Positions 10,101 through 34,500 of a stretch of DNA of 64,000 nucleotides are shown one piece after another. The notes below the pieces were generated by a model. The model did not search any database. It saw only the letters and a list, made by a program, of their open reading frames with translations, and was not told the DNA's origin. The DNA lies in the IMG/VR virus record IMGVR_UViG_3300009514_000001, positions 62,001-126,000 of that record. The stretch is one strand, 5' to 3'. A program made the translations under genes and the position numbers. The first letter of the stretch is position 1; each line of letters starts with the position of its first letter.

Positions 10101-13100
10101 AGGGGAGGAGTTCGGAATACCTAACATCTACCAACCCGCCAGTCTTCACTACCGGAACGGCCATGCCAGGGAACAGAGAGGAGGCTGTGGTAAGGGGGAG
10201 TTTTTCTCCTCCAATCCTTAGGTTGTCCAGAAGAAAGGAACCGTTTGTCTCAGCGACTTTCTCTGCCAGCTTACGAGCTTCGACATAGGAAGGAACCAAC
10301 TTGTTAAAGGTACGACGACCCCCTTTGACCACATAGGTTGCTAGCCCGCAGCTATCTACGTCGTCTCCAGACCATGACATCGAGACCCTAGAACCGACTT
10401 GATACCGGACAGACCGATGAGCATTGAGAGAAACGACCCTTCGAACCTCCTTGCCCCTAGTACTCGTCTGATTGACCCAATGAGGGTAGTCAAAGTAGAG
10501 ATCATGGGCCTCCAGTATCCGTCGTCCGTTATGTCCGAACTCCAAGAACACCCCGTTGATACGCTCCTGGTTACACCCCCGAACAGAGCCCCGAACAGAG
10601 CCCTCGTAGAGGTAGGTCGGAACCTGGTAGCGAAGGGAGTAGAGCTGTTCCTTGAGGAGAATGTCCTCCTCTTCACCCACTTCCAAGAGCCAAGCGCGAT
10701 CTGCCCTTTCTGAACCAGCCCTACTTGAGGAGCCTCCCGCACTTCGAGAAAAAGGACGAGTCGAGGCACCGATACGAAAACCGAGGTCCTCCCGGTACAT
10801 GAGGTAAAGACCCATTTGACCCTCGGGAAGGAGGCCTCGGAAAGGGGTCGCATAGATGCGGTGGTTGGGGGACATCACCAGCTCACGTCCAGAGGAGGTG
10901 GTGATACGATATCCCCTCGACCAGTTGCTCTTTTTCTTGGCCAACACCCTGTTGTAGACCACCTTTCCATTCTCGAACGAGAGGACTGAGCCGCCCACCT
11001 GGACATCACGGATGGCCTTCTCCCCTTCCGGAGTGTAGACGAGGGTCGACCCTAGGACGCAAGCATTCAAATCCTGAGCTTCGTCGACGACGACCATTTT
11101 GAACCGACGTTGGATGCGAGTCCGCACGTTGCGGTTCTCAATCATCATCTTCGAGGCGCCGATGAGCATGTCATCGAAGTCGCCCTGGCCCTCGTACTCG
11201 CTGGCGTTTCCCTTGAGCCACTCGTAGGCCCCGTAGACTGCCGCATAGATGGAGGCGTTAGACTGGCTGAGTGCCCCGTCTCTGGCCCCATCCTGAACAG
11301 CCTTGCCGTGTTCCTCGTGAGCCGCCTTGCCAGGGGCCAGAAGCTGGCCCTTGGTCTTTGAGACGTAGAGGGCGAAACGACCAATGGGGATGGCCGACTT
11401 GGAGTCGCCGGACCCTTCATGGAAGTCATCGTCCCAGGAGGCCCCCAAGTTGAACCACTGGTTCGCCGGCTGCTCTCCCCAGATGGGATTCTTGCTCTTG
11501 ACCCGACCTGACCACGGGGGCTCGTCGGTTTCATCACGGGCGGTCCTTAGGACCGAACTTGTAGTCGCCACAGAAGCGAGCTTGTAGTGGCCCCACCCCC
11601 GACGTTGGAGGGCTCGACGGGTACCTCCGCGCTCATTCTGGTCGGAGGTGACGGCATAGCCCAAGGCACGGTTGATGAAGTCCTTCTGCTTCTGAGTCAT
11701 CTTGGTGGGGTCGACAGGACTCGACTTCCACTTCTGAATGATGGATTGGGACTGGCGGTTCCACCTACTTGGACCGTACTTGCCTTCGTTCCATTTCAGG
11801 AAGTCCATGACGGCAAGAAACACTGAAGAAAGCTCGTCGATTCGCTCTTGGGACTCGTCGACATCGCCCTGCACCTTGGGGAAGAAGGTGGCTTCCGCGT
11901 CGGGCTGGGGCCAGGAGTCCTGCGAGGGCATCATGAGAACCTGGAGGATGGACAGACGAACCAGCTCGGCCTGGTCATATCCTGAGATGATCTTGCCACC
12001 TCTCCTCTTGCCGTAGGTCATACCCATCTTCAGAGCGACGCTGTGGGTCGTCCCGAAGCCTGACTTGCCCTGGCGGTCGGCGTCGATATCGCCGCCGTAG
12101 TTCTTGACGCGCTCAATAAGCTCGGCGCTCGACTTCTTCGTGAAGGAGCAGGCCAGAATCTGGTTGGCCGTCAGACCCACCTCGTTCATATGGTAGACGA
12201 TCTTGCCCGCCAGAACTCTCGTGTTGTGAGAGACAACACCGTTCGCAAGGAAGCTGTGCGTTGTCGGGACCGTGAAGTCATAGACCCGGTGGGTACCCTC
12301 CACACGACGCACCGACACCACCTCGTCAAGGCACATGTCGGAGAGCTTATGGAGAATAGCCGCCTCTGGTCCTTCTGCACCTTTCACGAGACGTTTGAGT
12401 TGCGCCCTTGACGGAGTTCGGTTGCCGAGCAAGTAGTGCTTGACCTGGACCCATCGGTCATCCATCAACAGCGACTGAGACTTCCCGTGCCATCTACCGG
12501 CTTGCTTCCACCACTCTCGGACACCTTTGAGAAGGTCTCCTACATGGGGTACTCCGATGTTGGGGTTGCAGTCCTTTGCGCACAGACTATTCAGGTCATC
12601 GGCCTTCTTGAAGTCGTATCGGAACCCAACGACCTCCCGGAACCCCCGGAGCTGGTCACCGCTGATGAGGATGCGCCAGTACGTGTGGTCGTACCCCTCA
12701 ACATGCTTGGGCTTGAGCATTCCTACAACGCCGAGGCCCAGGAGCATCTGGTGTACCTGACGGGCAAGCGTCTCTGAGGCTGACAACCACTCGAAAGAAC
12801 GGTCTCCAGTAGCCGTGCCGTCTGTATCAAACAGACCCTGCAAAAACCTGATCCTCTCCGCGTCGGAAGAGGACAGGAGCCACGCTGGGACTATCTTGTC
12901 TCGCGCGGAGGAGAAGAACATTCCCTGCTGACGGAGACGCTCCTGAAGTGAGGCACTCCAAAACGTGTGAGTAACGCTCTTCATGTCCTCTTTGGTTGTC
13001 TCTTTGGTTGTCTCTTTGGGTTGCTCGCCCCAGAATTTCTGGGCTAGGCGATAGAAGTGAGAAGGAAGGAAGTCGCCCCCACGAGACCAACAAACTCTGG

Positions 13101-14358
13101 TCTTCTTCGAATCACACCAACCATCACCCATGAACATGCCCAGGAGGTATGCCTCTTCCGGGTCGACGTTCTCCTTTCCCGTGTCAAGAGCATACCCAGG
13201 CTTGAGGACTACGAACTGCCCCTCTTTCATGACATCGAGACGCGTCCACACGGATTGCCCGTCCCAAGTCAGGAGAGGGTGCTCTGGAGTCCCTCGTAGG
13301 CGGATGCCTGAACGAGTTTGGACTTCGATGACCTTGCTCTCCCCCATGTCGAGCCAGGTGGCCTTCTCCAGAGTTGTGTCCAGGGTTTCCGGATTGACCG
13401 ACTTGACCCAGTCCTTTCCACTACACTGATCTAGGCGGAAGGTACCACCCTCAAGTGCCACAAGGGCATCTCCCGTCAGGCATTTGCCCGATCCCGCCCC
13501 GGCTGCAATGACAGCCCGGCCCCGAACCAGCATCGCATCCTCCTGCTCCGGAGAGAGGTTGATGTGTTTGCCAGTCTGTGTCCTGAATTCCTGGGCGGGG
13601 GGGATGGACTTCGAGGCCGCCACAGCCGCTACTGAGGTAGGAGCTTGGCTCGTCTCGACGACCTCTTCGATGCGAGCGTTCAGGGCCGCTTTTCGCTCCT
13701 TGAGAGCTACGGAGCGAGCTTCTGTGGGGTCTGTGGAGGAGATGGCCTGCTTGACGTCTGCGACCTTCTCAGCCAGTATCGCAACCGTCTCGGCGTCCGA
13801 CTGGGCCTCTTCGGTCTCGCTCAGTCCGGCGCCGAGGTTCTGTGCCGCGACCTTGACCCAGTTGCGTGGCTTGACGATGCCACTGACGGCCGGGATGGCT
13901 GCCAAGGCCCTCAGGACGGCCGCCGGGTCTTCCAGCTTCGAGGCATGGAGAACGCCCTTGACGGCGGCTCGGGAGCGACCCGTGAACACACTGCGTAGGA
14001 CGTCTGCCTTGTTGACCAAACGACTGAGAGCTGTGGTCAGGAAGTCTACCTGAGCGAAGACGACGACGTCGGCGCGACCTTTGGCCCGCTTCGCCTTGTT
14101 CATCTTGCCCTTGACGCCACCAATGCGTCCCTCCTCGACCAAGGGATACATGTGCTTCTTTAGGTTGGCCTCCATCTCCTTGCGATAGAGACGGGCGATC
14201 TCAAAGCCCCGCTTGAGATGGTCGTCGCGACCGCGGGCTTCCATACCTCGGGCGTAAGCCCCGAACCCAACCCAGAAGACACTGAGGTCCACCAGGCGGT
14301 CTGGTGTAGTCACATGGTCGCTGCCTTTCTTCTTCGCCGCTGCTTCGCGAGTAGTCAT
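7123..14358 (-). CDS. uvrD: UvrD/PcrA-family SF1 helicase with three inteins and a long N-terminal extension
   Basis: After removing the inteins: AGAGSGK|T, FTKKSS, VDEAQD, GDDKQ|SIYSFRGA, NYRS, TVHGWKGLE, ERRLAYVAVTR. Confidence 0.95.
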   Translation of the reverse strand: MTTREAAAKKKGSDHVTTPDRLVDLSVFWVGFGAYARGMEARGRDDHLKRGFEIARLYRKEMEANLKKHMYPLVEEGRIGGVKGKMNKAKRAKGRADVVVFAQVDFLTTALSRLVNKADVLRSVFTGRSRAAVKGVLHASKLEDPAAVLRALAAIPAVSGIVKPRNWVKVAAQNLGAGLSETEEAQSDAETVAILAEKVADVKQAISSTDPTEARSVALKERKAALNARIEEVVETSQAPTSVAAVAASKSIPPAQEFRTQTGKHINLSPEQEDAMLVRGRAVIAAGAGSGKCLTGDALVALEGGTFRLDQCSGKDWVKSVNPETLDTTLEKATWLDMGESKVIEVQTRSGIRLRGTPEHPLLTWDGQSVWTRLDVMKEGQFVVLKPGYALDTGKENVDPEEAYLLGMFMGDGWCDSKKTRVCWSRGGDFLPSHFYRLAQKFWGEQPKETTKETTKEDMKSVTHTFWSASLQERLRQQGMFFSSARDKIVPAWLLSSSDAERIRFLQGLFDTDGTATGDRSFEWLSASETLARQVHQMLLGLGVVGMLKPKHVEGYDHTYWRILISGDQLRGFREVVGFRYDFKKADDLNSLCAKDCNPNIGVPHVGDLLKGVREWWKQAGRWHGKSQSLLMDDRWVQVKHYLLGNRTPSRAQLKRLVKGAEGPEAAILHKLSDMCLDEVVSVRRVEGTHRVYDFTVPTTHSFLANGVVSHNTRVLAGKIVYHMNEVGLTANQILACSFTKKSSAELIERVKNYGGDIDADRQGKSGFGTTHSVALKMGMTYGKRRGGKIISGYDQAELVRLSILQVLMMPSQDSWPQPDAEATFFPKVQGDVDESQERIDELSSVFLAVMDFLKWNEGKYGPSRWNRQSQSIIQKWKSSPVDPTKMTQKQKDFINRALGYAVTSDQNERGGTRRALQRRGWGHYKLASVATTSSVLRTARDETDEPPWSGRVKSKNPIWGEQPANQWFNLGASWDDDFHEGSGDSKSAIPIGRFALYVSKTKGQLLAPGKAAHEEHGKAVQDGARDGALSQSNASIYAAVYGAYEWLKGNASEYEGQGDFDDMLIGASKMMIENRNVRTRIQRRFKMVVVDEAQDLNACVLGSTLVYTPEGEKAIRDVQVGGSVLSFENGKVVYNRVLAKKKSNWSRGYRITTSSGRELVMSPNHRIYATPFRGLLPEGQMGLYLMYREDLGFRIGASTRPFSRSAGGSSSRAGSERADRAWLLEVGEEEDILLKEQLYSLRYQVPTYLYEGSVRGSVRGCNQERINGVFLEFGHNGRRILEAHDLYFDYPHWVNQTSTRGKEVRRVVSLNAHRSVRYQVGSRVSMSWSGDDVDSCGLATYVVKGGRRTFNKLVPSYVEARKLAEKVAETNGSFLLDNLRIGGEKLPLTTASSLFPGMAVPVVKTGGLVDVRYSELLPLSEYRRLASRLGIDCSGMGKGAREKFHTLMRKEQLRRAEDPLPPLRESSVELEIIEEVALVDGGEFFDIEVERASNFFGGDILSHNSQHLFVGLVAGYYDPETQEPREDGDMTADTLALIGDDKQCVAANSVIATPGGNSKHASAIQPGDVVLSYRNGKVVPQKVRHAVKSSWTWGLDVITEGGQHLLMSPNHKLWVGDIITEGGQHIVYLMWRRDMGFRVGVTNKGKDTQYLNHFGGRAFLEKAEKLWVIDVCEDREKALLKETQYSLRYGIPTAVFNGVHRGLNQDRIETLFREFGRNGGRLLEARNLSFDLPNWMSRSYTKHGRKRRTLNMIAHSGANTQVAMEWTGYDLDDCLEGVRFVRTAQGRNRLRRWFANYRDALAFAQDVVQRTGAMLSRRLSTPEGPMRLVTASAVKPGMTVPVLVPMFKGRAISGPNLPEGAQYTIVQEKVVAVNRTEDTKFVDLDVEDASNFFANGILSHNSIYSFRGADPDLFIEKSDLTPGGEGFETKILRMNYRSGSAIVDAANQMIAHNEKQIKMVCQANVERKGEGSIREVTVPSREALGPYVAQAIADQVQGDDASLKARDFGIAVRTNREAYEYGVAMIQLGIPFRSKYNFFKGPAKSVLSLMQLSNMGASALTEPAKRVDPLVLDALRSLNWGISINTFKKAASKARGKNLLAWLLGGGWDEVYVGRARRRNREYVKPFADYLQEITLLSSKDRDTPLDTQGLLNYILDRKGGQDDKSITDNLVERVKNDAKAMEDVSASALKGTEDVTLEQAIEDYALGPLTILKTAASSYPSIDEFASYMSELERANAKLQKSDNPNDPDFDAAVNAVQLDTVHGWKGLEAPHLFVPMWEGGGPGHGGFPHPNSESEEDIASERRLAYVAVTRGEDSVTIVRPDVLGTTKKGVTIRSKPSRFVTEGCIPSEDFTERTSSWLSDVEADQLLAQDLPDVEWPSEDILSRFSSRQNGPEELRAKWGEFLPEDM
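8653..9726 (-). mobile_element. Intein UvrD-3, 358 aa, sister of UvrD-2
   Basis: Starts CVAAN after GDDKQ and ends SHN|S; internal IVYLMWRRDMGFRVG. Confidence 0.92.
9844..11061 (-). mobile_element. Intein UvrD-2, 406 aa, non-LAGLIDADG (GIY-YIG-like) insert
   Basis: Starts CVLGS after DEAQDLNA and ends SHN|S; internal GLYLMYREDLGFRIG. Confidence 0.92.
12223..13482 (-). mobile_element. Intein UvrD-1, 420 aa, LAGLIDADG type
   Basis: Starts CLTGD after the Walker A lysine and ends SHN|T; LLGMFMGDG and FLQGLFDTDG motifs. Confidence 0.95.
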
Positions 14359-14461
14359 CCGCTGGCCTCAATCAAGGTCAAACCGTACGAGGAGGTCTCT
14401 CTCTCTTACAAGATATCGACTTTCTATCGACCCACTAGATCACACAAAGGCGCAGGGGTCT

Positions 14462-15494: not shown

Positions 15495-15501
15495 ACGAGC
15501 C

Positions 15502-15717
15502 TCACTCCGGAGCTTGGTTCAACGCGTCCAGAATCTCGGCTTTGGTGTTCCGACTGGTTACGTCCAGGCCGCGCTCCTGTGCAGCCTGTAGAAGCTCGGC
15601 CTTGGTGTTGCTCATGGAGAGCACCTCGGGTTCCGAGACGGGTTCTGGCACCGGGGCCGGGGACTCGGGGAACTTCCGAGCCCTTCTCTTCATAAATGGG
15701 GGTGTCCACTGACTCAT
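15502..15717 (-). CDS. Small protein with a Rho-N/HeH-like domain
   Basis: TKAELLQAAQERGLDVTSRNTKAEILDAL; ATG 15717 follows GAGGAG. Confidence 0.65.
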   Translation of the reverse strand: MSQWTPPFMKRRARKFPESPAPVPEPVSEPEVLSMSNTKAELLQAAQERGLDVTSRNTKAEILDALNQAPE

Positions 15718-16680: not shown

Positions 16681-16711
16681 ACCCCCTCCTCGGGCTCATA
16701 CACTGACGGAC

Positions 16712-16741
16712 AATATAGAAAGAACCGCAGACCGAGGTCAG
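16712..16741 (-). promoter_or_regulatory. Candidate sigma70-like promoter
   Basis: CTGACC-N18-TATATT on the minus strand, upstream of the gene starting at 16680. Confidence 0.3.
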
Positions 16742-17784: not shown

Positions 17785-17788
17785 GACA

Positions 17789-18274
17789 TCAACCCCCCTC
17801 AAGCTCGAAAGACACCCTCTCCAACTCGACGAACTCCCCTTCGACGAAGGACACGCGCCCACTGACGTTCATCCGGAAGGGACGGGACTTCTTGAACTGC
17901 TCGATGAGGCGGGTGTCCGTCAGCCGGAACCCTCCGCGCCAACCGAGAAGACTGGCATACAGGAAATCCAAGGCGGTAGGCTCGGAAATCTCGGCCACAT
18001 GACAGACTAGAAGGGGAACGTCCTTGACGTCGGCCCCTCGCTCAGGAACCTCGATCTTGCCCTCCGAGGCCTTCAGGCGTGACCTAGCTTCCAGGTAGTC
18101 GGCCTGGAAGCGGAGACTCTCCTGTTCCCCCTTCGAGAGTCCAGTCCCCTGCGCAATCTTGTCGACGTACAGGGTCTCAATCCGCATGTCCGGGTAGGAC
18201 TCCAGCGCCCACGCCAGGCGGGGGTTGTCCGAAGCCCAGGATTCGTACGCCTCAGTTTTCTTCATGTCACTCAA
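17789..18274 (-). CDS. Hypothetical protein, 161 aa
   Basis: TTG start 5 nt after AAGGAGG. Confidence 0.75.
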   Translation of the reverse strand: MSDMKKTEAYESWASDNPRLAWALESYPDMRIETLYVDKIAQGTGLSKGEQESLRFQADYLEARSRLKASEGKIEVPERGADVKDVPLLVCHVAEISEPTALDFLYASLLGWRGGFRLTDTRLIEQFKKSRPFRMNVSGRVSFVEGEFVELERVSFELEGG

Positions 18275-21678: not shown

Positions 21679-21927
21679 CGTCTTCTCTCGTCTTGTCTAT
21701 CTTCTCATCGAGAACGCGCAGGTGTCTCTCTTGCCTGGCAAGGGACTTCTCCTGGGCCCTGAGGGCACCATTGTGCACCTTACCGAGGGTGGCGCGGATT
21801 CGTTCCACGCGCCTCTCGACGAGACGAGCCCCTCCCTGCACTCAGCGAGGTCACCTGGACACTCGGACGAAGGTCCAATACCCAGAGCGGCCTCCAAGAC
21901 AGCTAGGCGTCTTTGGGTGTCATCCAT
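21650..21927 (-). pseudogene. Small coiled-coil gene frameshifted by a 5-bp duplication
   Basis: ACGAG is doubled at 21819-21828; removing one copy fuses the two overlapping ORFs into a 90-aa ORF, MDDTQRRL...CREGLVERRVERIR... Confidence 0.6.
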
Positions 21928-24900: not shown

Positions 24901-26017
24901 GGACGCCGAGGTCCTGTCGCTGGAACCGCTTTTGGAACTTCTTGGCCTCCCCCCGAAACCGGTCGACCATAGCCTGGAAGGTCTCTCCAGTGTCGTCCGT
25001 GACTGCCATCTCTGGGTTGGTCACCTCGATGTACAGGGACATGAGGTAGAACGACAGAGGCGTGATGTCGCGCTCCAGGATGTCGGAGGCCCCTCGATAC
25101 ACCTCCTTAACGGCCTTGTAGAGGTCCCCCTGGCCGAGCTGAATCAACTCAGCCACCTTGGCCAGGTCGATGTGGAGGCGATTGCGCTCCATCCAGCGGA
25201 CACTAGGGAGGCAGAGCTTCTCGACCTTGTGGATGAACCCCTGGCTATGGGGTCGATTTGTGCTCTCGTTCTTGCTTGTCAGAGCAAGGGCCTTCTTCTT
25301 GAGCTTCTCATAGAGCTGGAGAGTGCAGATGGCGTCGGCCGCAGCGTACTCCAAGATGCCTGGGTCGGTGGGGTCCAACTCAGCGAAGTTCAGGTCCTTC
25401 GTCTTGGGCGGGAACAGCTCCTTCAGCTCGATTTGCTTCTTCCCCAGGAGGGCGTCTGACATCACCTTGAGGGTCTTCGCTCGACGGGTGCTGTCATCGA
25501 GGTAGGCCAGGATGAGGACGTCTTCCCAGGAGTCTGGGTTGTCCCACGTGCCGTACGGGAGACCCCCGTTGTAGGTCATCAACTCGCCCTCGAACTTGCA
25601 GTTGAAGACGAGGGGGACTGACCTGTCCTTGCCCTTGCGCTTCATGCCCTCCATCAGTCGACGGACCTCGGCATCGAACTCGTGGAAAGGGACGTTGTGC
25701 TCTGACGGCTCGTCGTTGGGGCAGTGACGGACTGGGATGTAGTAGCCGGTCTTGGTGTTCGGGGACAGACAAAGACCGACGATGTCGCAGTTGGTCTTGT
25801 ACTGCGTCCCTTCTGGAGTCTCCCGAGGGAACACGCGGGTGTCGAGGCCTGTGGTCTCCAGGTCGAGGGCGTAGTAGGGCTTCGACAGACACTCGTCGAT
25901 GACCTCGCGCAGCCTGGCGCCGGTCGTAACCAGCTCCATGCGGACCTTCTTCATCCACGGATGGAGGGCGACCTCAATCTTGGGCTTGTCCAGGAACCCG
26001 GCATCAAACAACGACAT
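21920..26017 (-). CDS. polA: Family A DNA polymerase with 3'-5' exonuclease domain and one intein
   Basis: DLETTG, YAAAD, TATGRFSS, motif A DFGGVELR, motif B K|SANFALSYG, motif C MHDEL. ATG 26017 follows AAGGGG (the ORF track starts at GTG 26023). Confidence 0.95.
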   Translation of the reverse strand: MSLFDAGFLDKPKIEVALHPWMKKVRMELVTTGARLREVIDECLSKPYYALDLETTGLDTRVFPRETPEGTQYKTNCDIVGLCLSPNTKTGYYIPVRHCPNDEPSEHNVPFHEFDAEVRRLMEGMKRKGKDRSVPLVFNCKFEGELMTYNGGLPYGTWDNPDSWEDVLILAYLDDSTRRAKTLKVMSDALLGKKQIELKELFPPKTKDLNFAELDPTDPGILEYAAADAICTLQLYEKLKKKALALTSKNESTNRPHSQGFIHKVEKLCLPSVRWMERNRLHIDLAKVAELIQLGQGDLYKAVKEVYRGASDILERDITPLSFYLMSLYIEVTNPEMAVTDDTGETFQAMVDRFRGEAKKFQKRFQRQDLGVLKMCQTGQVSVANHSGKGGLRIVLDAPKFGELIAREAPPPRKGVELKDSYDVLAPAQLGTLMWDLAVPGLKKTPSGQVATGKEVLEEVIENSIHDYPFVNRIKWMRGNQNALGKLYAIFEDTYRHDNTLKIGFRQFATATGRFSSKGEREPAKTGGTRFNLQSMPATYDTNRPPALLRIRECIVAPTGWTMVAIDFGGVELRLAANLSGEKKWIDAFFRCSACDLEFDRGDGKTTPPAPPLFCPQCGEDKIGDIHTLTAIQIFGESAQRRKDWKEKRKQGKCVHPDSILGMSGALRRIGSLKFAEEPDTFLKYPGTVFTGQDGEEDELRLLETYQGGEQEVYHVVSRRGLLTCTAQHRFLLADGTFKSIEQGLDTGDVLAEPVGTPYVETKPWRRVGYRPYKNLPEMGVSLSPDMAYFAGMFSGDGAKQGSTSVSITHGHVDKVDQLGLPYKTWQDIIVESCEKVGFLPTRKDQLVYLGSRHTMRFLSALGLVEGVEGKRCLRIPDWVLGRGPTALWSFLGGLVDTDGTVGEDGRMSWTSKDFVFSGQLVAVCHALGMTPCVEPTFNKTYQRWYVRTHIRASQAWGLYAYLRHPMKRSRLREAKEYKSATGANKVRVILPAGTSNVVDLHVAEPNVYWTNGLVVHNSANFALSYGGGPKAIHRNTGCGENEAYRIANQFKKAYTSLQEWWKRTRKFAKDHGYVITAFQRKFPLPDIKHEERFIRAKAERNAVNSPIQGSSADITKLAMGLIYKEVRRRKWQDKVRMIITMHDELVFEIRNDILEEACDLFSGLMVSNPIILGRNWAVPLTVDVELGPNWTVKHNMTAFRYAVGLRRELQQPGLDDDQIWALLRRVRGFYGNSEDVKGKFGSFEDIRWPPTLEPYFESGRHDRENPLTEEEKAALARAWDMFHSGSQGVPKGPAEDSLESRVIPYRLSKVDEEEGERIAQAIVGSHDPEGFRLELFAPDGVPLDGWFPEPVLVDRGRFVELMDG
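22964..24058 (-). mobile_element. Intein in polymerase motif B, 365 aa, LAGLIDADG type
   Basis: CVHPD...VVHN|S; FAGMFSGDG and FLGGLVDTDG. Confidence 0.95.
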
Positions 26018-26026
26018 ACACACCCC

Positions 26027-27054: not shown

Positions 27055-27679
27055 GGAATAGCTCGTTGTAGCGTTTCAGGAGACGCCCCTTGGCCTCCTT
27101 CCAGGGAAGCGGGACAATGTAGTCCGAGAACCACCCTGTGTGAATGTTGGTGGCGAACAAGCGCCCGTTGACGGGCCGAGGAAGAGGTTGTCCCCCCACT
27201 TCCTCGGGGAGGTCCCACGACTTCACCGGGTCCCTATCCCCGAAGAAGCTGTGAATCTCCAGAACCAAAGCCGCCAGGTCTGCCCACCGTACACTGGGAG
27301 GCATCTCCGGGACATCCGGGTCGAAGGGAATGCCCAGGGCGCTCCATATGGTCTGGGTGGTCTCCCACTCCACGTCGTCGAACCAAGTGATTCCGTCCTG
27401 TCTCATCCTGTGCTTGATGGGCTCTCCGAGGTCCCCCAGGTAGGCCTCGGCGAAGTCATGGGTGAGTCCTTTCCTGGCGTCCTCGGGGGCGCATAGCTGA
27501 CTCACCATGATACTGTGCTGGGCCACGGAGAAAGGCTCCGGGGTATGGCCGTTGTAGCGAGGCTGGGCGGACAGCGAGTGCACGATATCGAGGATGTGAA
27601 CGTCCTCTCGGGCGAGACGGTGGGGGTAGAGGAATCGGCGCTGGTAAGCGGTCTTGAGGCGTGGTTCTTTCTTTCTCAT
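27047..27679 (-). CDS. HD-domain nucleotidase, YfbR/YfdR-like
   Basis: RYNGH...FSVAQHS...LTHDFAEAYLGD; TGATG coupling to the DnaB gene. Confidence 0.85.
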   Translation of the reverse strand: MRKKEPRLKTAYQRRFLYPHRLAREDVHILDIVHSLSAQPRYNGHTPEPFSVAQHSIMVSQLCAPEDARKGLTHDFAEAYLGDLGEPIKHRMRQDGITWFDDVEWETTQTIWSALGIPFDPDVPEMPPSVRWADLAALVLEIHSFFGDRDPVKSWDLPEEVGGQPLPRPVNGRLFATNIHTGWFSDYIVPLPWKEAKGRLLKRYNELFHE

Positions 27680-30552
27680 CAGTCGTCGCTGCTCATGAAA
27701 TCGGTGGATAGTTCCTCGGCCTTGCGCACGGTCTCTTCGGCCTTCTCTGCGTTGGCCAGGGCCTCGAAGTCTACCGGGTCCGTGCAGGTCATGACGCGCC
27801 GACAACGCCAGTCAACGGCTGTGTAGAGAGGTTCGAACTTCTCGTCGTCTCTGGTCTTGATGCACTGGACTAGGAGACGATTGGTCTTCCGAAGGACATC
27901 ATTGATGAACCCGGCCGTGATGACGTCGCTGGAGCGTTCGATCTCGTTGGAGTAACTGAGGTCGTAGGCCTCATAGATGCCCACGCGGCCTCCGTTCTTG
28001 CCCATGTTGGCGCGCTTGAACCCCTCGCGGCTGATCTGGAACAGGGCCACGACGGCGATGCCTTCCCCTCGGTTGAAGTTGTTGGACAGAATCTTGAGAT
28101 CACGGACGACCTCATTGGCCCTGGCTGTCGTACTCGGGTTGTACTGCTTGGGGTCAACCAGGAGGACGTGGTCGACCACAATCATGTTGAACGGGCTCTG
28201 GCGATAGAGCAGCTCTGACTTGGACCGAATGTCGCTGACCCGGAAGCTGTCCTCATCCGGGTTGTACCCCACGAAGTGCATCTTGCCGTAGCCGTTGGCC
28301 GGGTCTTTCAGGTCTGGGAGGACGAACTGGGTGAGGAACTCCTCCTCGTTCGGCGGCAGACACCCATCCCGGAGGAAACGGTAACGAAGCCCCAGGTCAA
28401 CCTCTCCCTGTCTCTGGATGGCCAGACGGAGGCGAGCCTCCCGGAACTTCGGGTGCATCGAGTGCATCGCGATAATGATGCGACGACATTGGTCGTAGGA
28501 CATCTCCAGGGTGAAGTAGCAGGAGCTGTACTTGAACCAGATGGCCTGGTTGTAGACCCAGTTGAAGGCGACGCTGCTGTTGTGGACGATGAACCCATCC
28601 GCGACGAAGTTCTCGGGTCCCGGGACGGACAAATCGTAGGTCATCTCCTCCCCGTCGTAGGTGACCTCATCCACCTGGGTCCACCAGACGTCACCGTCGG
28701 CCTGCCGGAGCAGACCATCGTCCTGGGCCGCCTCTGCGAGACGACGAACCGTGTCCCGGTGAACTGACCGGCGCTCTTTCGCCCAACGCGCATATTGCCA
28801 ACCCCCCTTGCGAGTCTGGGTGCGGACGTCATCACCAAGGTGGGCCAGAAGGGCCGTGGGCATCTTGTCGTCTTCGGTGCGGTCAGGGAGGTGTCCGAGA
28901 GCTTCCTCCACAGCATCCTCCACAGCATCCTCCACAGCATCCTCCTTGCCGAAGATAGTAGACCGCGTAAGGAACCGGCGCTTCGACTCCGTGGTCCGAA
29001 CAGAGACGTTCCAAAAGACTCTCCTCTCCCCCTTGTACATAATCTGTACGGGGGAGAGAGTGGTCACTACCCCGACTCGTTGGAGGAGGAGTTGGATATC
29101 CGAGGCCAACTGACGGCTCTTACTCGTGTAGTAGATGTTGACCTGGTGGCGATCTTGCCGACCCTCACGTCGCCGGAACACGGACCCCACGGACCCGTCC
29201 GTCGACCACAAGGCCGAGAGAAACAGCCACGTCTGGTCGTCGGTCATCGACCACAACTCACCCGGGACGAACTTGTCCTCGGAACCCTTATCCCAGAGAC
29301 CAAGATCCTCAGCCAGGACACGAAGGGGGGAAGTCCATGGATGGTACTTACTTCGGCCAGTGGAAGTACTCAAATCAACCCTGTCCGAACGCTCTCGGAA
29401 ATAAGCATATCGAGCCTTCCCTCCCTCCGGGGCACGCCTATACCCCATCCTGCGAAGACGGGCGATGAAGTCGGAGCGGATGCCTGGATTCGATACGGAT
29501 AGTTGCAGACACTCCCTCAGGCAGCCGTCCCCCAGGAGATATCCGAGACACACCACTTGGTCGTCACTCCACTCAGAGTCCTCGGGGGAAGTGGTCATGT
29601 GCTTGGCCAAACCCACCCAAGAGCCCTTCTGAAGACCATCCGCACGCACCCAACCTCCGGGGGTGAGGAACGGATGGTTCTCCGACACACGGATGGTGTG
29701 GCCTGTCTTGGTTCGCACCTTGAGGATGGGCTTGACTCCGTTCTTCGCCACCCTACTCGTGCGGGTCTCCGCCAGCTTGACAGAGCCCTCGTCGAGGGCA
29801 TGGAGCCGCGCGCAACGACGGCTCTTGTAAAGATCACCTATCGTTTTCAATTCTCCTGTGTAAGTGTCGAATATCTTTACGGAATTCGCGACGCATTTTA
29901 AGTGACCTGTAAAGCCAGCATGGGTCCAGAGCTGCTTCTTGCGGGCACCGCCGAGGGCGACGTCAATCTGCTTGATGCCCATGTACTGGCCGATACCGAA
30001 GTTGGGGTCATCGCGCCGTCGTTTGTAATCCTCCCAGTAGTCTTCGGTGTCCTCAGTGACCTCGCCGTCTGTGCGCATCCCACCTGGTGGGCGACCGATG
30101 AGGGAGGCCTCCCGCTGGAAGTAGGAAATGGCGTCACGAGGGCCCTTGAAGATGCGGTCCTTCCCGTCCTTCCCTGGGAGCTTGAGGCCCTGCATATTGA
30201 TGTGGTTGGCGTTTTGGAGACGCTCCTGGAGCTTGGCCTGGAGTCTCTCCTCTGAGCGTTCGTAGAGGCGGGCTCGGAAGTCGCCCCGGAACAGGGGTCG
30301 GAGCTGTTTGAGAATCTCAAGCTGGTCTACGATGTCGCTCTGCTTCTCCCGACGGAAGTGAGAGGTCAGGGTCGTGACGTCGGGGGCATGGTTGTGGGCA
30401 CGGAAGAACTCTCTAACGTACTCCCAGATGGTCTGGTGCTCTGGGATGAGGAACTCAAGGCCCTCGGCCTGGGTGTCCAGGATGTTGGCCAGGAGGAGAT
30501 CAGGGTCATCGGTATGGTCGACCCTGAACATGGACCGCAACAAAATCTTCAT
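27679..30552 (-). CDS. dnaB: DnaB-like replicative helicase with intein
   Basis: GFTGHLK|SS, YFTLEMS, IVVDH, LFQISR, IERSSDVI. Confidence 0.88.
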   Translation of the reverse strand: MKILLRSMFRVDHTDDPDLLLANILDTQAEGLEFLIPEHQTIWEYVREFFRAHNHAPDVTTLTSHFRREKQSDIVDQLEILKQLRPLFRGDFRARLYERSEERLQAKLQERLQNANHINMQGLKLPGKDGKDRIFKGPRDAISYFQREASLIGRPPGGMRTDGEVTEDTEDYWEDYKRRRDDPNFGIGQYMGIKQIDVALGGARKKQLWTHAGFTGHLKCVANSVKIFDTYTGELKTIGDLYKSRRCARLHALDEGSVKLAETRTSRVAKNGVKPILKVRTKTGHTIRVSENHPFLTPGGWVRADGLQKGSWVGLAKHMTTSPEDSEWSDDQVVCLGYLLGDGCLRECLQLSVSNPGIRSDFIARLRRMGYRRAPEGGKARYAYFRERSDRVDLSTSTGRSKYHPWTSPLRVLAEDLGLWDKGSEDKFVPGELWSMTDDQTWLFLSALWSTDGSVGSVFRRREGRQDRHQVNIYYTSKSRQLASDIQLLLQRVGVVTTLSPVQIMYKGERRVFWNVSVRTTESKRRFLTRSTIFGKEDAVEDAVEDAVEEALGHLPDRTEDDKMPTALLAHLGDDVRTQTRKGGWQYARWAKERRSVHRDTVRRLAEAAQDDGLLRQADGDVWWTQVDEVTYDGEEMTYDLSVPGPENFVADGFIVHNSSVAFNWVYNQAIWFKYSSCYFTLEMSYDQCRRIIIAMHSMHPKFREARLRLAIQRQGEVDLGLRYRFLRDGCLPPNEEEFLTQFVLPDLKDPANGYGKMHFVGYNPDEDSFRVSDIRSKSELLYRQSPFNMIVVDHVLLVDPKQYNPSTTARANEVVRDLKILSNNFNRGEGIAVVALFQISREGFKRANMGKNGGRVGIYEAYDLSYSNEIERSSDVITAGFINDVLRKTNRLLVQCIKTRDDEKFEPLYTAVDWRCRRVMTCTDPVDFEALANAEKAEETVRKAEELSTDFMSSDD
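28579..29895 (-). mobile_element. Intein after the DnaB Walker A lysine, 439 aa, LAGLIDADG type
   Basis: CVANS...IVHN|S; LGYLLGDG and FLSALWSTDG. Confidence 0.95.
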
Positions 30553-30567
30553 GAATGAGGCGCTCCG

Positions 30568-31506
30568 TTAGCTTCCTTGCTTCTTGCTCTTCTTCTTGGC
30601 CTTCTTTTTCTTCCACTCCTTCTCTGGGTCCCGATGAACCCGAAGTGAAGACTTCCGACTCTCTTTCACGAGGCCAGTCTTCGAGGGCAACTCCTGGTCG
30701 AACCCGACGGTCCCTGAGGTGACCGGAGACGGCATGTCGGGGTAGTCGGTCTCGCGGTCGTCACCCAGATCGATTCCGACGTACTCCCACATCTCGATGT
30801 GGTCCATCAGGTGGTCGGAGTAGCACAGATGGCCGGGAGCTAGGGGGGTGTGGGGCTGGTCGAAGAGCCAGGTGGGCTTGCCCTCGTGGAACCGGCTGCT
30901 CAGAGCCTCCCCCAACACCCCGGGCATCTCCTTGTTGTTCGCCGCCTTCATCCCCAGATGGATGATGAGCAGCTCTGGAGGAATCACCAGGTCCTGGAGG
31001 GTGTAGAAGGACATGGAGACCGGAGCGGCGTCCGAATCAAAAATCTCGCCACCCCCCAGAGGAACGGTCGCCAACCAGGCGGTTATCAGGTCAGTGTCGC
31101 TAGCGACCTTGAAAAACCACCGGCTCCCTTTGCGAATGGCGACATGACGGAGGTGCTCTCGGAACACCCTCGTCGGCGCCGTCACCCACACGTTCTTGTC
31201 GGTCAGGTCCCGCAAAGGCGAGGACTCGATGTTGGCGGCCCGACTCAGACCACGCCACCCGGCCTCGACGTTGTCGAGGATGTCCCGTGCGGCCATGCAC
31301 TCACAGCGCATCCGTCCTGGGGGAATGGTGGAGTCGTCTTGAACGAACCCGTGACCGAAACATTGGGGGCAGTTGGGGTCCCCGGGACCCGTGTCGTCGA
31401 CCTTCTCCCGATAGTCAGGGTGGTTGAGTCCTGACGTCTCTGCATCGAAAGCCACTCGACGTCTTTTGTAGTTGGAGCCGTAGCCGTCGTGGTCGTCGTC
31501 CTTCAC
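30568..31506 (-). CDS. DnaC/IstB-like helicase-loader homologue with degenerate ATPase motifs
   Basis: N-terminal CPQC...CEC; ELLIIHLG, SRFHEGKPTWL; lies directly upstream of dnaB. Confidence 0.65.
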   Translation of the reverse strand: MKDDDHDGYGSNYKRRRVAFDAETSGLNHPDYREKVDDTGPGDPNCPQCFGHGFVQDDSTIPPGRMRCECMAARDILDNVEAGWRGLSRAANIESSPLRDLTDKNVWVTAPTRVFREHLRHVAIRKGSRWFFKVASDTDLITAWLATVPLGGGEIFDSDAAPVSMSFYTLQDLVIPPELLIIHLGMKAANNKEMPGVLGEALSSRFHEGKPTWLFDQPHTPLAPGHLCYSDHLMDHIEMWEYVGIDLGDDRETDYPDMPSPVTSGTVGFDQELPSKTGLVKESRKSSLRVHRDPEKEWKKKKAKKKSKKQGS

Positions 31507-34500
31507 TTCTTCCTCCTTGATTTCCGCGCGTCCTCCAGAACGCCCTCGTAGATGGCCTTGAGGTCTCCGTCTGCGCTAATAGTGACTGGCTTGGACTCGC
31601 CCTTGATGCGCCGGCCGAGGACAGCTTCCACCAAATCCATCTTCTTGCGCAAGACCTGATTGACACGCATGTCGATGGAGCCGATGCCGCACAGGTGGAT
31701 GGCATAGACCCGGTCGTGCTGACTGCCGATGCGGACCATCCGCCCCAGGAGCTGGAGGTAGTCACCGGCGCTCCAGGGGGTGTCGTAGCAGATGAGGCCC
31801 TTGGCGGCTTGGAGGTTGATGGCGTCCGATCCCGCCGTCGTAATGACGATGACCTTGGTGTCTGAGTTGGGGTCCTGGAAGAGACGCTGCGCCTCTGCGC
31901 GCCTCTTCGGATTGCTGTCGTGCCCCGTGATACTCACCGCGTAGCGGTTCTTCCGCCGCTCGTCAGTGTTGTTGAGCGCGGGCATGATGAGCTTAACCAT
32001 CTCGGCGAACCGGGTGAACACGATGACCTTCTCATCGGCCAGGTCGCCCTCTGACAAGAGGTCCTTGAGGAGGCTGAACTTCTTGGACTTGCCATCCCTC
32101 CCCAACAGCTCTGGGTGGTTGACAATCTGCTGGAGGCGCGTACACGCCGTGAGGTGGTCGACCTCCTTCTGCTCCATCTCCCCCGTCTCTTTGTCCTGGA
32201 CCCAGAGGAGGCCGGAGAGGGCTTCGCTGTACAGACGAGTCTGGTCGCCGTGCATCGAGAACTTGAGCATCCGGAAGGTCACGTTCGGAAGCTCTGTCGC
32301 GACCTCGTGCTTGGGCCGCCCCAGGAAGAACGGGTCTATCACCCGCCGGAACCTCTCGATGTCCTCGTCCCGGTATCCGATGATGACCGGAATCTGTCGG
32401 CCGCTCTTGGGGAGCTTCTGCAAGCGGGTGATGCAGTAGTCCTTCATGAAAGAGGTCTTCGTCCCAAACAGCGGAGGCATGACGACCTTGTAGATGCCAT
32501 AGCCCTCGATGAGGTTGTTCTTGATGAGAGTCGCTGTCAGACCCCAAACCCAGGCAACCCCTTCCTTTTGGGCCAGGGCCTTGCAGACCTGGTGGATACG
32601 GGCTCTCGGATTCTTGAACGCAGTTGCCTCGTCGTAGACGACGACCCTGAAGTCGAGTTCACCGTGGATTTTAGTAAAGTCTGCCCTCGCCAGGGCATAG
32701 TTCATGACGATGACTGCCGGTCCTTTCTCGGCGAGAAACTCAGCGTATTGCTTCTCCCTCTTCTTCGGATTTCCTCCGGTCATCGCTGTGACGTGCACCC
32801 CTGTGGTGAACTTCTGAAACTCGCCGGCCCACTGGGGGACGGCTGACTTCGTCGTCAGGATGAGCGCCTTCTGGTCTGGGTTGGTCCTCCAGAGGACACA
32901 GAGGGAGGCGATGGTACTGAGCGTGTTGTGGTTGACAACCCCATTTCCGACATAGCAATGAGACGGGTCGTCGACTGTGATGTCGTACACCTCGGCCTCT
33001 CCCCTCTCGATATTCCTCACAGGATCGTAGAACCACTCTCTCTGACGAACCCGACTCAACTCTAGGAGGGAGGGGGAGTCTTGTGGCACTCCCACCTCTA
33101 ACGCAACCCCCAACATGGTATCGAGGAACGAATAGGAGACATTACGGCGCCCTGCCCGGACATGTCCAAGGGTGGTATAGAAAGCATTCCCGAATCTCTT
33201 CGAAGTGCCTCCCCCCTTGTACCCCTGACGTCCACAACGAGCGTAAATCTCCTCCCGCAAGGCCTCCACCTCTGGCTTGAGATGGGGGACTACATCGTGG
33301 TTGGTGTTCTCCTTGTGCTGTGTCAGGGGAAGGATGGCGTCCCGCTTGCGTTGAGAGATGAGACCCACGTGCTCCATGAACACTCGGGCGTCCTCCCCCA
33401 GGATTGTCAGCCTCCAGTAGGTGTGGTCTCGCCCCTTAACCGCCTTCGGAGACCTACGGGACACAACCCCAAACCCCAGAAGGACAATCTGGAGCTGTTT
33501 GGCCAATTTCTCCGAGGCAGAACTGAACTCGATACCGTTCTTGGTAACGTGGCTCTCCGCATCCACTAAAGCCCGTACAAACTGACGCACGCACTCCCGG
33601 TCTGCCCGAAGGACCGACCACGGGATACACTTGTCTTTGGCGACTCCTTTGGGGACACCTATCGCCTCCAGCCACCGAATCAGATAGGTGCTGGCTATGG
33701 GATAATCGTTCCCATGTTTTCGTACGGGATATTTGAACAGAGTGTCAATGAGGTATTCGATGTCCGCACTGGTCTCAGGATTACTAAGGGAGCACTGGCT
33801 GATAGTAAAAAACCTTCCATCCTTGTGGTTAAACCACCCCTCTCCATCCTTGTGGTTAAACCACCCCTCTGCGATCAGATACCCCAGGAACCTGGCCAGC
33901 TCTGGAACCATCTTGAACTGGGTGGGGTACGTTTTCTCCCCATTCCGAGCGACCTCAGAGGGGAGGGACACGGGGACCCTTCCAAACTTGTAAGGGCTCC
34001 GATCAATGCAAAGGTAGTCCCCCTCACGAACCTCTGCGAGCTTAACCCAGACCTCACCTCCGCCACGACGAACCCGGACCGGGTGGACGAGAGACCCTTC
34101 GATCTCAAAGCCGTGATGCGTCTGGACTTTCCGGGTAGGCTTCACACCTCCATGGTAGAACTGTGAGACCTGGAGTTCCTTCCCCCCGACCTGAACGCTC
34201 CAATGATCCACGGGAGCAAAGGTGTCTGGTTTCGTGATCCCTGGGTTGATATCCTCGATAGGGACCAACCCATTCGACCCCGTTCGAATCAGGGTGTCTC
34301 CTCTGGTGCACTTACCTAATCCGGTGTCGTCGCCCAGGATGAACCGCCCCATGGAAGCCATGTGCAGGATGCCGATGACCTGGTAGTCCCGAATCTTGAG
34401 GGGGCGCTCCACCCCATCGAACCCGACGAAGGTCTCCCGGAGGTTCGGCGGCTTCCTCTTGATGGCCAGGCCCTTCTTCTTCCGAATGGCCGAGAGGCGC

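What the first reader, a model, noticed from the sequence alone, without database searches (positions are those of the whole stretch)
10577..33870. Perfect in-frame micro-duplications inside four of six inteins
Seen: 12 bp x2 at 10577-10603 (GSVR, absent from the sister intein alignment); 12 bp x2.7 at 12988-13019 (KETT); 12 bp x3.4 at 28904-28945 (DAVE); 27 bp x2 at 33816-33870 (EGWFNHKDG, overlapping the end of the first LAGLIDADG motif). Inteins total 7350 nt, about 11 percent of the window, and I noticed no comparable perfect duplications in the flanking exteins. UvrD-3 also has an older imperfect pair, DVITEGGQH/DIITEGGQH. Inference: slippage or repair of endonuclease-induced breaks is tolerated, or selected, as a way to disable homing endonucleases while preserving splicing.
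Basis: partly seen in the sequence, partly recalled or inferred. Interest (0 to 1): 0.6.

Follow-up and report, generated by a model that had tools for sequence, protein, structure and literature searches.

The report
In-frame micro-duplications in phage inteins
Four of the inteins in this 222-kb phage genome carry short, perfect, in-frame tandem duplications; these look like ordinary slippage mutations in an unusually duplication-prone genome, kept because the non-splicing part of an intein tolerates insertions about as well as non-coding DNA.

Summary
All four duplications are at the stated coordinates, perfect, in frame and far beyond chance. The six intein boundaries sum to exactly 7350 nt.

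- **Derived insertions.** The SNF2 9-residue duplication is absent from 105 homologous inteins. The UvrD-2 GSVR duplication is absent from 13.
- **Enrichment in this genome.** A scan of the 222-kb phage genome finds 18 perfect duplication loci with units of 12 bp or more. Four lie in inteins (0.47/kb), against 0.045/kb in other coding sequence, 0/10.9 kb in exteins and 0.22/kb in intergenic DNA. Nominal P is 0.001 to 0.004, for a hypothesis formed after seeing the data.
- **Not general.** In 59 homologous intein loci from other phages, inteins and flanks are equally poor (0.013 versus 0.011/kb). This genome is about 6 times richer everywhere.
- **Location.** All duplications lie in the endonuclease or inserted domain, never in splicing blocks. 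AlphaFold loops two of them out of otherwise confident folds.

The best reading is genome-wide slippage filtered by selection, with inteins under relaxed constraint apart from frame and splicing. Selection to disable the endonucleases, or break repair as the cause, is not supported. Read support could not be tested.

The parts
7123..14358 (-). UvrD-family helicase precursor gene (2411 aa) carrying three inteins
   Evidence: ORF. Pfam UvrD-helicase, UvrD_C, Intein_splicing x3, LAGLIDADG_3 and Hint.
12223..13482 (-). UvrD-1 intein (420 aa, LAGLIDADG type), inserted after GSGK of the P-loop
   Evidence: Runs from Cys1 to SHN, followed by Thr. LAGLIDADG_3 match. hhalign probability 100% to the SNF2 intein family.
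12988..13019 (-). 12 bp x2.67 perfect repeat (KETT KETT KE) in a variable-length loop of the first endonuclease half
   Evidence: hhalign places it in the loop after helix alpha-2, where the family varies in length.
9844..11061 (-). UvrD-2 intein (406 aa), with a non-LAGLIDADG inserted domain, placed after DEAQDLNA (helicase motif II)
   Evidence: Orthologs in 26 IMG/VR phage contigs and in E. coli phages, where it is annotated 'intein'. AlphaFold pLDDT 83.6, with a Hint fold at Z about 21.
10577..10603 (-). 12 bp x2.25 perfect repeat (GSVR GSVR G) between invariant P148/T149 and G162
   Evidence: It is a 4-residue insertion absent from all 13 homologs. Modelled as a loop with pLDDT below 50 between helices 131-145 and 165-185.
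8653..9726 (-). UvrD-3 intein (358 aa), paralog of UvrD-2 (37-38% identity), inserted before SIYSFRGA; no tandem duplication
9478..9570 (-). Dispersed imperfect repeat DVITEGGQH ... DIITEGGQH (27 nt, 21/27 identical, 66 nt apart) flanking splicing block B
   Evidence: No length gain relative to homologs in A4.
21920..26023 (-). Family A DNA polymerase precursor (1367 aa)
   Evidence: Pfam DNA_pol_A and DNA_pol_A_exo1.
22964..24058 (-). PolA intein (365 aa, LAGLIDADG type); no duplication
27679..30552 (-). DnaB-type helicase precursor (957 aa)
   Evidence: Pfam DnaB, DnaB_C, Intein_splicing and LAGLIDADG_3.
28579..29895 (-). DnaB intein (439 aa, LAGLIDADG type)
   Evidence: Ortholog at 38% identity (tblastn) in LR745208.1.
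28900..28945 (-). 12 bp x3.5 perfect repeat (x3.8 at 97%): EDAV EDAV EDAV EEAL, in the helix that follows the endonuclease core
   Evidence: Mapped by hhalign to model helix 320-331 of the SNF2 intein.
29179..29196 (-). 9 bp x2 perfect repeat (GSV GSV) directly after the second LAGLIDADG motif (STDGSVGSV)
   Evidence: The hairpin is 3 residues longer than in the LR745208.1 ortholog. Period-9 repeats number 14 observed against 1.6 expected.
31503..34544 (-). SNF2-family helicase precursor (1013 aa)
   Evidence: Pfam SNF2-rel_dom, Helicase_C, LAGLIDADG_3 and Intein_splicing. An intein-less relative is L001.
32925..34310 (-). SNF2 intein (462 aa, LAGLIDADG type), inserted after GLGK of the P-loop
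   Evidence: 105 homologous inteins at the same site. AlphaFold pLDDT 94. Foldseek best match is the TliVMA intein 7qss, E=1e-25.
33816..33870 (-). 27 bp x2.04 perfect duplication (EGWFNHKDG x2), starting at the catalytic Glu of LAGLIDADG motif 1
   Evidence: Unique among 106 family members at an otherwise length-invariant position. Modelled as a low-confidence loop (pLDDT 58-74) between helix 136-148 and strand 168-171.

Best explanation
The four repeats, plus a fifth 9-bp one, are recent replication-slippage or strand-misalignment duplications. They arose in a phage genome that makes or keeps such duplications at an unusually high rate everywhere.

Selection then filters them. In ordinary conserved coding sequence, including the helicase and polymerase exteins, they are removed. 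They persist in intergenic DNA, in poorly constrained orphan proteins and linkers, and in the inserted (endonuclease or accessory) domains of inteins.

An intein has to meet only two requirements for its host: keep the reading frame and keep the Hint splicing module working. Frameshifts and stops inside an intein would destroy an essential replication protein. In-frame insertions are therefore the only large lesions that can survive there.

Because a tandem duplication repeats its own context, the protein keeps the native sequence on both sides and extrudes the extra residues as a loop.

- **Shown:** presence, perfection, frame, derived state, location outside the splicing blocks, the density contrast, and the lack of a general intein effect.
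- **Inferred:** slippage as the mutational mechanism, relaxed selection on the endonuclease domains (homing-cycle decay after fixation), and retained splicing.
For: **The repeats are real and in frame.**
- They are perfect and beyond chance.
- Unit lengths in the genome peak at 9, 12, 15, 18, 21, 24 and 27, while periods 7, 8, 10 and 11 are at chance level.
- Every coding-sequence event with a unit of 12 bp or more is a multiple of 3. This is the signature of real mutations passed through a frame filter, not of assembly error.

**Density of perfect units of 12 bp or more.**

| Class | Loci | Per kb |
|---|---|---|
| Inteins | 4 | 0.47 |
| Intergenic | 6 | 0.22 |
| Other coding sequence | 8 | 0.045 |
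| Exteins | 0 (in 10.9 kb) | 0 |

- Inteins against other coding sequence: P=0.0013. Inteins against intergenic DNA: not significant.
- TRF loci scoring 50 or more give the same picture.

**Where the other coding duplications lie.** They fall in proteins with no Pfam family, or outside the only domain found.

**The duplications are derived.**
- The SNF2 duplication is unique among 106 inteins.
- GSVR is unique among 14.

**Structure.**
- AlphaFold keeps confident folds (pLDDT 94 and 83.6), with only the duplicated stretches at low confidence.
- All five events lie in the inserted domain, none in the Hint blocks.

**This genome is duplication-rich overall.** Non-intein DNA has 14 events in 213.6 kb, against 5 in 438 kb around homologous inteins in other phages (P=3e-4).

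**Inteins use less adapted codons.** Their GC3 is 0.61-0.75, against 0.76-0.84 in exteins. This fits weaker selection or foreign origin.

**Literature.** The homing-cycle model predicts loss of selection on the endonuclease after fixation, while splicing stays selected (PMC1654191, PMC8966425).
Against: - The enrichment rests on 4 or 5 events, and the hypothesis was formed after seeing them. The nominal P of 0.001-0.004 overstates the evidence.
- Two duplications (SNF2, UvrD-2) hit positions that never vary in length in the families and lie next to catalytic or invariant residues. Simple tolerance with a still-selected endonuclease would not predict this. It requires the extra assumption that these endonucleases are no longer under selection.
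- The rest of each endonuclease domain looks intact: catalytic Asp or Glu residues are present and there are no other lesions. Long-standing decay is therefore not evident.
- No reads, population data or close relatives were available; the nearest SNF2 intein is 61% identical. Recency, polymorphism and the slippage mechanism are all inferred.
- Why this genome is duplication-prone is unexplained.
Confidence: 0.65

Rival explanations
1. Adaptive inactivation: in-frame duplications next to catalytic motifs were positively selected because they switch off the homing endonucleases without harming splicing.
For: Three of the five events sit right at functional elements:
- The 9-residue duplication starts at the catalytic Glu of LAGLIDADG motif 1 in the SNF2 intein, at a position that is length-invariant in 104 of 105 homologs.
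- GSV x2 follows the catalytic Asp of motif 2 in the DnaB intein.
- GSVR lies between invariant residues of the UvrD-2 inserted domain.
Against: - No benefit of inactivation is evident. The intein disrupts its own target site, so the endonuclease does not cut its carrier.
- Neutral decay predicts the same positions.
- KETT and DAVE lie in variable loop or helix segments.
- AlphaFold places the first copy of EGW at the helix end and loops out the rest. The SNF2 event is therefore effectively a hairpin-loop extension, which may not inactivate at all.
- Homologous inteins elsewhere show no such events.
Confidence: 0.08
2. Homing-associated mutagenesis: each homing event copies the intein by break-repair DNA synthesis. 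This synthesis is error-prone and prone to template switching, so inteins accumulate duplications faster than DNA replicated only normally.
For: - Density in inteins is at least as high as in intergenic DNA, 0.47 against 0.22/kb.
- Lower GC3 in the inteins suggests lateral arrival.
- That repair synthesis is mutagenic is established knowledge from yeast gene conversion, recalled here and not tested.
Against: - The model predicts a general intein enrichment. In 59 homologous intein loci of other phages the densities are equal, 0.013 against 0.011/kb.
- The three inteins without duplications (UvrD-3, PolA, actin-like) would share the same history.
- The intein-to-intergenic difference is not significant (P=0.27).
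Confidence: 0.08
3. Chance clustering: the genome is simply rich in tandem duplications, and four fell in inteins by luck. A reader noticed this only because the pattern happened to be there.
For: - 14 of 18 loci lie outside inteins.
- Counts are small and the hypothesis is post hoc.
- Intein density does not differ from intergenic density.
- An independent set of inteins shows no enrichment.
Against: - Binomial P is 0.004 against the genome and 0.0013 against other coding sequence. With the 9-bp class included it is 0.006-0.009.
- There are zero events in 10.9 kb of exteins of the same genes.
Confidence: 0.14
4. Assembly or sequencing artefact: the duplications do not exist in the phage DNA.
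For: - The record is a metagenome assembly.
- It is the only sequence of its 90% cluster.
- No reads could be examined.
Against: - Units of 12-27 bp, with total spans of 27-55 bp, are shorter than typical reads and k-mers.
- Artefacts would not respect the reading frame. Yet every coding-sequence event with a unit of 12 bp or more is a multiple of 3, and periods 10, 11, 13 and 14 are at chance level.
- All long ORFs are intact.
Confidence: 0.05

Closest known systems
Homing-cycle degeneration of intein homing endonucleases (Gogarten and Hilario 2006, PMC1654191; Beyer et al. 2022, PMC8966425, PhoVMA versus TliVMA inteins)
   Same: After fixation the endonuclease domain is released from selection while splicing stays selected. 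Lesions accumulate in blocks C-E while the Hint fold is preserved.
   Different: The described decay consists of lost catalytic residues and deletions leading to mini-inteins. Here the catalytic residues are intact, and the only visible lesions are very recent in-frame tandem duplications, that is, gains rather than losses.
Repeat-bearing large inteins: the HEN(+)extra Prp8 inteins with linker or repeated motifs (Green et al. 2018, PMC5784728), and the Trichodesmium DnaB intein with large tandem repeats (recalled from memory: Yang, Meng and Liu, Mol Microbiol 2004; not found in the library)
   Same: In-frame repeated sequence is tolerated inside an intein without loss of the host protein.
   Different: Those are long arrays or linkers that add tens to hundreds of residues. 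Here only 3-10 extra residues are added per event, and intein sizes stay ordinary (406-462 aa).
Slipped-strand mispairing tandem duplications in coding sequence (micro/minisatellite-type indels)
   Same: Perfect head-to-tail copies, 0-8 nt of junction microhomology, unit lengths restricted to multiples of 3 in coding DNA, and concentration in loops, linkers and unconstrained proteins.
   Different: Nothing mechanistic differs. The only peculiarities are the host element (inteins) and the high genome-wide rate.
Orthologous intein set of the 485-kb metagenomic phage LR745208.1 (the same record as IMGVR_UViG_3300025030_000038)
   Same: A syntenic replication module with inteins at the same sites in DnaB, SNF2 and UvrD. 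Identities by tblastn are 38%, 36% and 48%.
   Different: Its inteins lack all of the duplications.

Membership tests
Intein (Hint-domain protein-splicing element) | Cys/Ser at position 1, a C-terminal His-Asn, and Cys/Ser/Thr as the first C-extein residue | tested here: met
   All six run from C1 to HN, followed by T or S. 105 of the 107 other SNF2-site inteins located show the same pattern.
Intein (Hint-domain protein-splicing element) | Hint fold or Intein_splicing profile split by an inserted domain | tested here: met
   Pfam PF14890 and PF01079. The AlphaFold models match solved inteins: Foldseek E=1e-25 and VIA Z about 21.
Intein (Hint-domain protein-splicing element) | Insertion in a conserved motif of a host protein that also exists without the insert | tested here: met
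   The SNF2 relative L001 lacks the intein; its match spans 1572 nt and covers query residues 16-1007. The inserts lie in the P-loop (GxGK|C) and in helicase motifs II and III.
Intein (Hint-domain protein-splicing element) | Autocatalytic protein splicing | not testable with these tools
   Inferred only, from intact blocks and the essential nature of the hosts.
LAGLIDADG homing endonuclease (intein-borne) | Two LAGLIDADG helices, each ending in an acidic residue, with the alpha-beta-beta-alpha-beta-beta-alpha core | tested here: met
   PF14528 over its cut-off in UvrD-1, DnaB and SNF2, and just below it in PolA (19.7 against 22.5 bits). The motifs, each with its acidic residue, are visible. 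The SNF2 model matches TliVMA, PI-PfuI and PI-SceI.
LAGLIDADG homing endonuclease (intein-borne) | Site-specific cleavage of the intein-less allele | not testable with these tools
   No assay is possible. The effect of the duplications on activity is unknown.
Slipped-strand tandem duplication | Perfect head-to-tail copies in excess of chance | tested here: met
   Shuffles give 0.08 expected against 8 observed for 12-bp units.
Slipped-strand tandem duplication | Derived insertion relative to homologs | tested here: met
   Met for SNF2 (0 of 105 homologs) and UvrD-2 (0 of 13). For KETT and DAVE the surrounding segment varies in length, so the test is inconclusive there.
Slipped-strand tandem duplication | Copy-number polymorphism in reads or in the population | not testable with these tools
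   No sequencing run was listed. The protein is the only member of its 90% cluster.
Repeat-bearing 'HEN(+)extra' inteins | Extra-large intein with long linker or repeat arrays in addition to the Hint and endonuclease domains | tested here: not met
   The inteins are 406-462 aa. The duplications add only 3-10 residues.
GIY-YIG / T5orf172-like nuclease (inserted domain of the UvrD-2 and UvrD-3 inteins) | Profile or fold match to the GIY-YIG superfamily | tested here: inconclusive
   No Pfam hit at E up to 10. The PDB profile search finds only Hint. The fold searches are dominated by the Hint part. The ESM-atlas feature search gives only weak leads to T5orf172/MUG113, scores 0.75-0.78. The conserved VYLMYRxDxGFRVG motif resembles GIY...YIG by eye.

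The most novel reading that the evidence does not exclude
In this phage lineage the window catches the very first step of homing-endonuclease decay. Frameshifts and stops are forbidden inside an intein of an essential gene. In-frame tandem micro-duplications would then be the dominant lesion class, and they hit the DNA-binding hairpins next to both LAGLIDADG catalytic residues (SNF2 motif 1, DnaB motif 2) and a conserved segment of a second, uncharacterised nuclease-like domain (UvrD-2). Alternatively, these hairpin extensions may remodel target specificity rather than destroy activity.
Probability: 0.15. Interest if true: 0.5.

Novelty: new member of a known kind. Interest (0 to 1): 0.3.

Why it matters
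If the reading is right, the finding illustrates a known principle rather than a new system. Inteins in essential genes behave like non-coding DNA with a frame lock, so in-frame duplications are the lesions that show up first.

It is mildly useful in three ways:
- It cautions that repeats next to catalytic motifs need not be adaptive.
- It identifies a natural set of insertion-tolerant positions in four intein scaffolds.
- It flags a phage genome with an unexplained, roughly six-fold excess of tandem duplications.

It does not open a long-standing question.

Tried and rejected
- **Near-identical DNA.** Megablast against the phage collection found nothing.
- **Close relatives.** The nearest SNF2 intein is 61% identical, and the window's protein is alone in its 90% cluster. 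A polymorphism test was therefore impossible, and I ran no further search on it.
- **Single-protein scans.** The search for related loci on IMG/VR with the DnaB and UvrD-1 inteins found no relatives.
- **PDB sequence searches.** They aligned only the Hint parts and were of no use for placing the duplications.
- **UvrD-2 inserted domain.** Fold searches of the whole model were swamped by Hint matches. GIY-YIG membership remains a lead only.
- **'Duplications are general to inteins'.** Tested and rejected, both on 105 SNF2-intein proteins and on 59 DNA loci.
- **Artefact.** Considered unlikely because of the strict multiple-of-3 pattern.
- **Literature.** The Trichodesmium tandem-repeat intein paper was not in the library and is cited from memory only.
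- **Steps deliberately left out.** I did not build joined (spliced) extein sequences or de-duplicated intein variants. Exteins and inteins were handled only by reference. The large representative-protein search was not used.

Full report
**Context.** The window is bases 62001-126000 of a single 222,005-bp virus record from IMG/VR. Its first 96 bases recur at the end, and its GC content is 60%. The region of the finding is a minus-strand replication module. It holds a UvrD-family helicase (7123-14358), a family A DNA polymerase (21920-26023), a DnaB-type helicase (27679-30552) and an SNF2-family helicase (31503-34544), all with Pfam intein and LAGLIDADG matches.

**Intein boundaries.** Reading the translations gives six inteins with canonical ends: Cys1, then His-Asn, followed by Ser or Thr.

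| Intein | Window coordinates | Length (aa) |
|---|---|---|
| UvrD-1 | 12223-13482 | 420 |
| UvrD-2 | 9844-11061 | 406 |
| UvrD-3 | 8653-9726 | 358 |
| PolA | 22964-24058 | 365 |
| DnaB | 28579-29895 | 439 |
| SNF2 | 32925-34310 | 462 |

Outside the window the genome has one more LAGLIDADG intein, in an actin/MreB-like gene, and two Hint-like mini-domains.

**The observation.** All four repeats exist as described, and each is perfect at the DNA level.
- 12 bp x2.25 at 10577-10603 (GSVR GSVR G)
- 12 bp x2.67 at 12988-13019 (KETT KETT KE)
- 12 bp x3.5 at 28904-28945 (DAVE repeats)
- 27 bp x2.04 at 33816-33870 (EGWFNHKDG twice)

Triplet-preserving shuffles of the genome give 0.08 perfect 12-bp duplications against 8 observed, and none for longer units.

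It is 9 bp x2 at 29179-29196 (GSV GSV), immediately after the second LAGLIDADG motif of the DnaB intein. Period-9 events number 14 against 1.6 expected.

The UvrD-3 'older pair' is real, but it is a dispersed repeat 66 nt apart around splicing block B. It adds no length relative to homologs, so it is a different kind of event.

**Are they derived?**
- *SNF2.* A word search restricted to the SNF2 intein returned 178 proteins, and I could delimit 105 homologous inteins at the same P-loop site. In the alignment every one of them reads ...AEGW.N.. followed directly by the strand ...ISQ. The nine extra residues occur only in the window.
- *UvrD-2.* Its orthologs are UvrD-3, a 485-kb metagenomic phage, E. 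coli phages in which the element is annotated as an intein, and 26 IMG/VR contigs. None of the 13 full-length homologs aligned has the four extra residues.
- *KETT and DAVE.* The nearest homologs are only 31-38% identical by tblastn, and the surrounding segments vary in length. The derived state is plausible but not proven.

**Where they sit.**
- *SNF2 model.* An AlphaFold model built on 88 sequences is confident (pLDDT 94). It matches solved LAGLIDADG inteins, with TliVMA 7qss at E=1e-25. The LAGLIDADG helix spans 136-148 and ends at the catalytic Glu of the first copy. Residues 151-167 form a low-confidence loop (pLDDT 58-74), and the next strand is 168-171. A tandem duplication keeps the native context on both sides, so this event amounts to a nine-residue extension of the first DNA-binding hairpin.
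- *UvrD-2 model.* Built on 14 sequences, it has pLDDT 83.6. The GSVR stretch (155-160, pLDDT below 50) lies in a loop between two helices of the inserted domain.
- *KETT, DAVE and GSV.* Profile alignment to the SNF2 family puts KETT in the variable loop after helix alpha-2. It puts DAVE in the helix that follows the endonuclease core, and GSV in the hairpin after LAGLIDADG helix 2.

No event touches a Hint splicing block, and all catalytic acidic residues are present.

**Enrichment in this genome.** I called genes with a codon-usage model and classified every repeat. Perfect duplications with units of 12 bp or more form 18 loci.

| Class | Size | Loci | Per kb |
|---|---|---|---|
| Intergenic | 26.8 kb | 6 | 0.22 |
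| Other coding sequence | 175.9 kb | 8 | 0.045 |
| Exteins | 10.9 kb | 0 | 0 |
| Inteins | 8.4 kb | 4 | 0.47 |

- Binomial P is 0.004 against the genome, 0.0013 against other coding sequence and 0.036 against exteins. Against intergenic DNA the difference is not significant.
- TRF loci scoring 50 or more give the same ranking.
- The other coding events lie in proteins without any Pfam family, or outside the one domain detected, an NYN domain.
- Unit lengths are almost all multiples of 3, and out-of-frame periods are at chance level. This argues that the events are real mutations filtered by selection rather than assembly errors.

**Independent replication.** If inteins attracted duplications as such, homologous inteins elsewhere should show it.
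- In 105 SNF2-intein proteins, perfect peptide tandems of 4 residues or more number 3 in 47,002 intein residues and 2 in 73,146 other residues. Both are close to chance.
- In 59 non-redundant phage loci (75.3 kb of intein DNA, 438 kb of flanks), perfect duplications of 12 bp or more number 1 and 5, or 0.013 against 0.011/kb (P=0.61).

This genome is therefore the unusual one. Its inteins are about 35 times richer than other inteins, and its remaining DNA is about 6 times richer than the other flanks (P=5e-4 and 3e-4).

**Interpretation.** The simplest account is a genome-wide, slippage-type duplication process with 0-8 nt of junction microhomology, filtered by selection.

Inteins in essential genes cannot accept frameshifts or stops. 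Their inserted domains, however, need not work for the host. This is the situation the homing-cycle model describes after fixation (PMC1654191, PMC8966425). Lower GC3 in the inteins (0.61-0.75 against 0.76-0.84 in exteins) fits weaker selection or foreign origin.

'Selected to disable the endonuclease' and 'repair of endonuclease-induced breaks' are not:
- The endonuclease does not cut its own carrier.
- Other inteins show no excess.
- Most events in this genome are outside inteins.

Two events do hit length-invariant positions next to catalytic or invariant residues. This suggests that those endonuclease domains are no longer under length constraint, but it cannot show selection for inactivation.

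**Limits.**
- Counts are small and the hypothesis is post hoc.
- No reads were available, and no close relative exists in the collections searched.
- Endonuclease activity and splicing cannot be assessed in silico.
- I did not construct spliced host proteins or de-duplicated inteins. All sequences were used by reference, as they stand in the window or in fetched records.

**Known relatives of the phenomenon.** Repeat-bearing extra-large inteins have been described (PMC5784728). So has a Trichodesmium DnaB intein with large tandem repeats, which I cite from memory only. Those involve long arrays. Here the events are minimal and recent.

I therefore rate this as a new member of a known kind, of modest interest.

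Noticed in passing
window 17063-17288 (minus-strand ORF 16738-17862): An 18-bp unit is repeated about 10 times (TRF score 303; also 96 bp x2.2), in a 374-aa protein with no Pfam family. By my reading of the consensus unit it encodes a PKKAEE-type peptide; this translation was not printed by a tool. It is by far the largest tandem array in the window, and it lies outside any intein.
   Followed up: partly
window 9844-11061 and 8653-9726 (UvrD-2 and UvrD-3 inteins); loci L006-L027: Two paralogous inteins at different UvrD motifs carry a conserved inserted domain that is not LAGLIDADG and has no Pfam match. The conserved motif is VYLMYRxDxGFRVG. The same intein type occurs in many huge-phage contigs and in E. 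coli Justusliebigvirus phages. Weak language-model leads point to T5orf172/MUG113 (GIY-YIG clan), but the fold was not resolved.
   Followed up: partly
window 9478-9504 and 9544-9570: In the UvrD-3 intein, two 9-residue segments (DVITEGGQH and DIITEGGQH) flank splicing block B. They differ mostly at synonymous sites and add no length relative to homologs. This looks like a short templated conversion of one site by the other, not a tandem duplication.
   Followed up: partly
genome 188443-190563 (minus), outside the window: An actin/MreB-like protein (706 aa) is interrupted by a 361-aa LAGLIDADG intein (CLAGD...VVHN|C). It has no tandem duplication.
   Followed up: partly
genome 203028-203369 and 204756-205139 (minus), outside the window: Two paralogous Hint-like mini-domains end in AHN|S and SN|S but have no obvious N-terminal Cys. 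They may be atypical or class-3-like inteins, or bacterial-intein-like domains.
   Followed up: no
genome 59000-60750 (just upstream of the window) and 5578-8196: Clusters of larger perfect tandem duplications (45 bp x2, 18 bp x2.2, 54/66 bp x2.2; 39 bp x2, 66 bp x2) lie in intergenic or weakly coding DNA. They may be iteron-like regulatory or origin regions.
   Followed up: no
whole genome: The density of perfect tandem duplications is about 6 times that of 438 kb of comparable phage DNA, and unit lengths are almost all multiples of 3. The cause of this duplication-prone state is unexplained.
   Followed up: partly
window intein and extein segments of the four host genes: Inteins have lower third-position GC (0.61-0.75) than their exteins (0.76-0.84). 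The four inteins with duplications are among the lowest.
   Followed up: partly
LR745208.1 294.7-304.2 kb (loci L002, L003, L118): A 485-kb metagenomic phage has the same DnaB, SNF2 and UvrD module, with inteins at the same sites (36-48% identity by tblastn). This intein set is old and shared among distantly related huge phages.
   Followed up: partly
window 30157-30174: A 9-bp x2 perfect repeat lies in the N-extein of DnaB, upstream of the intein. By my reading it encodes GKD GKD. It is the only extein event found.
   Followed up: no
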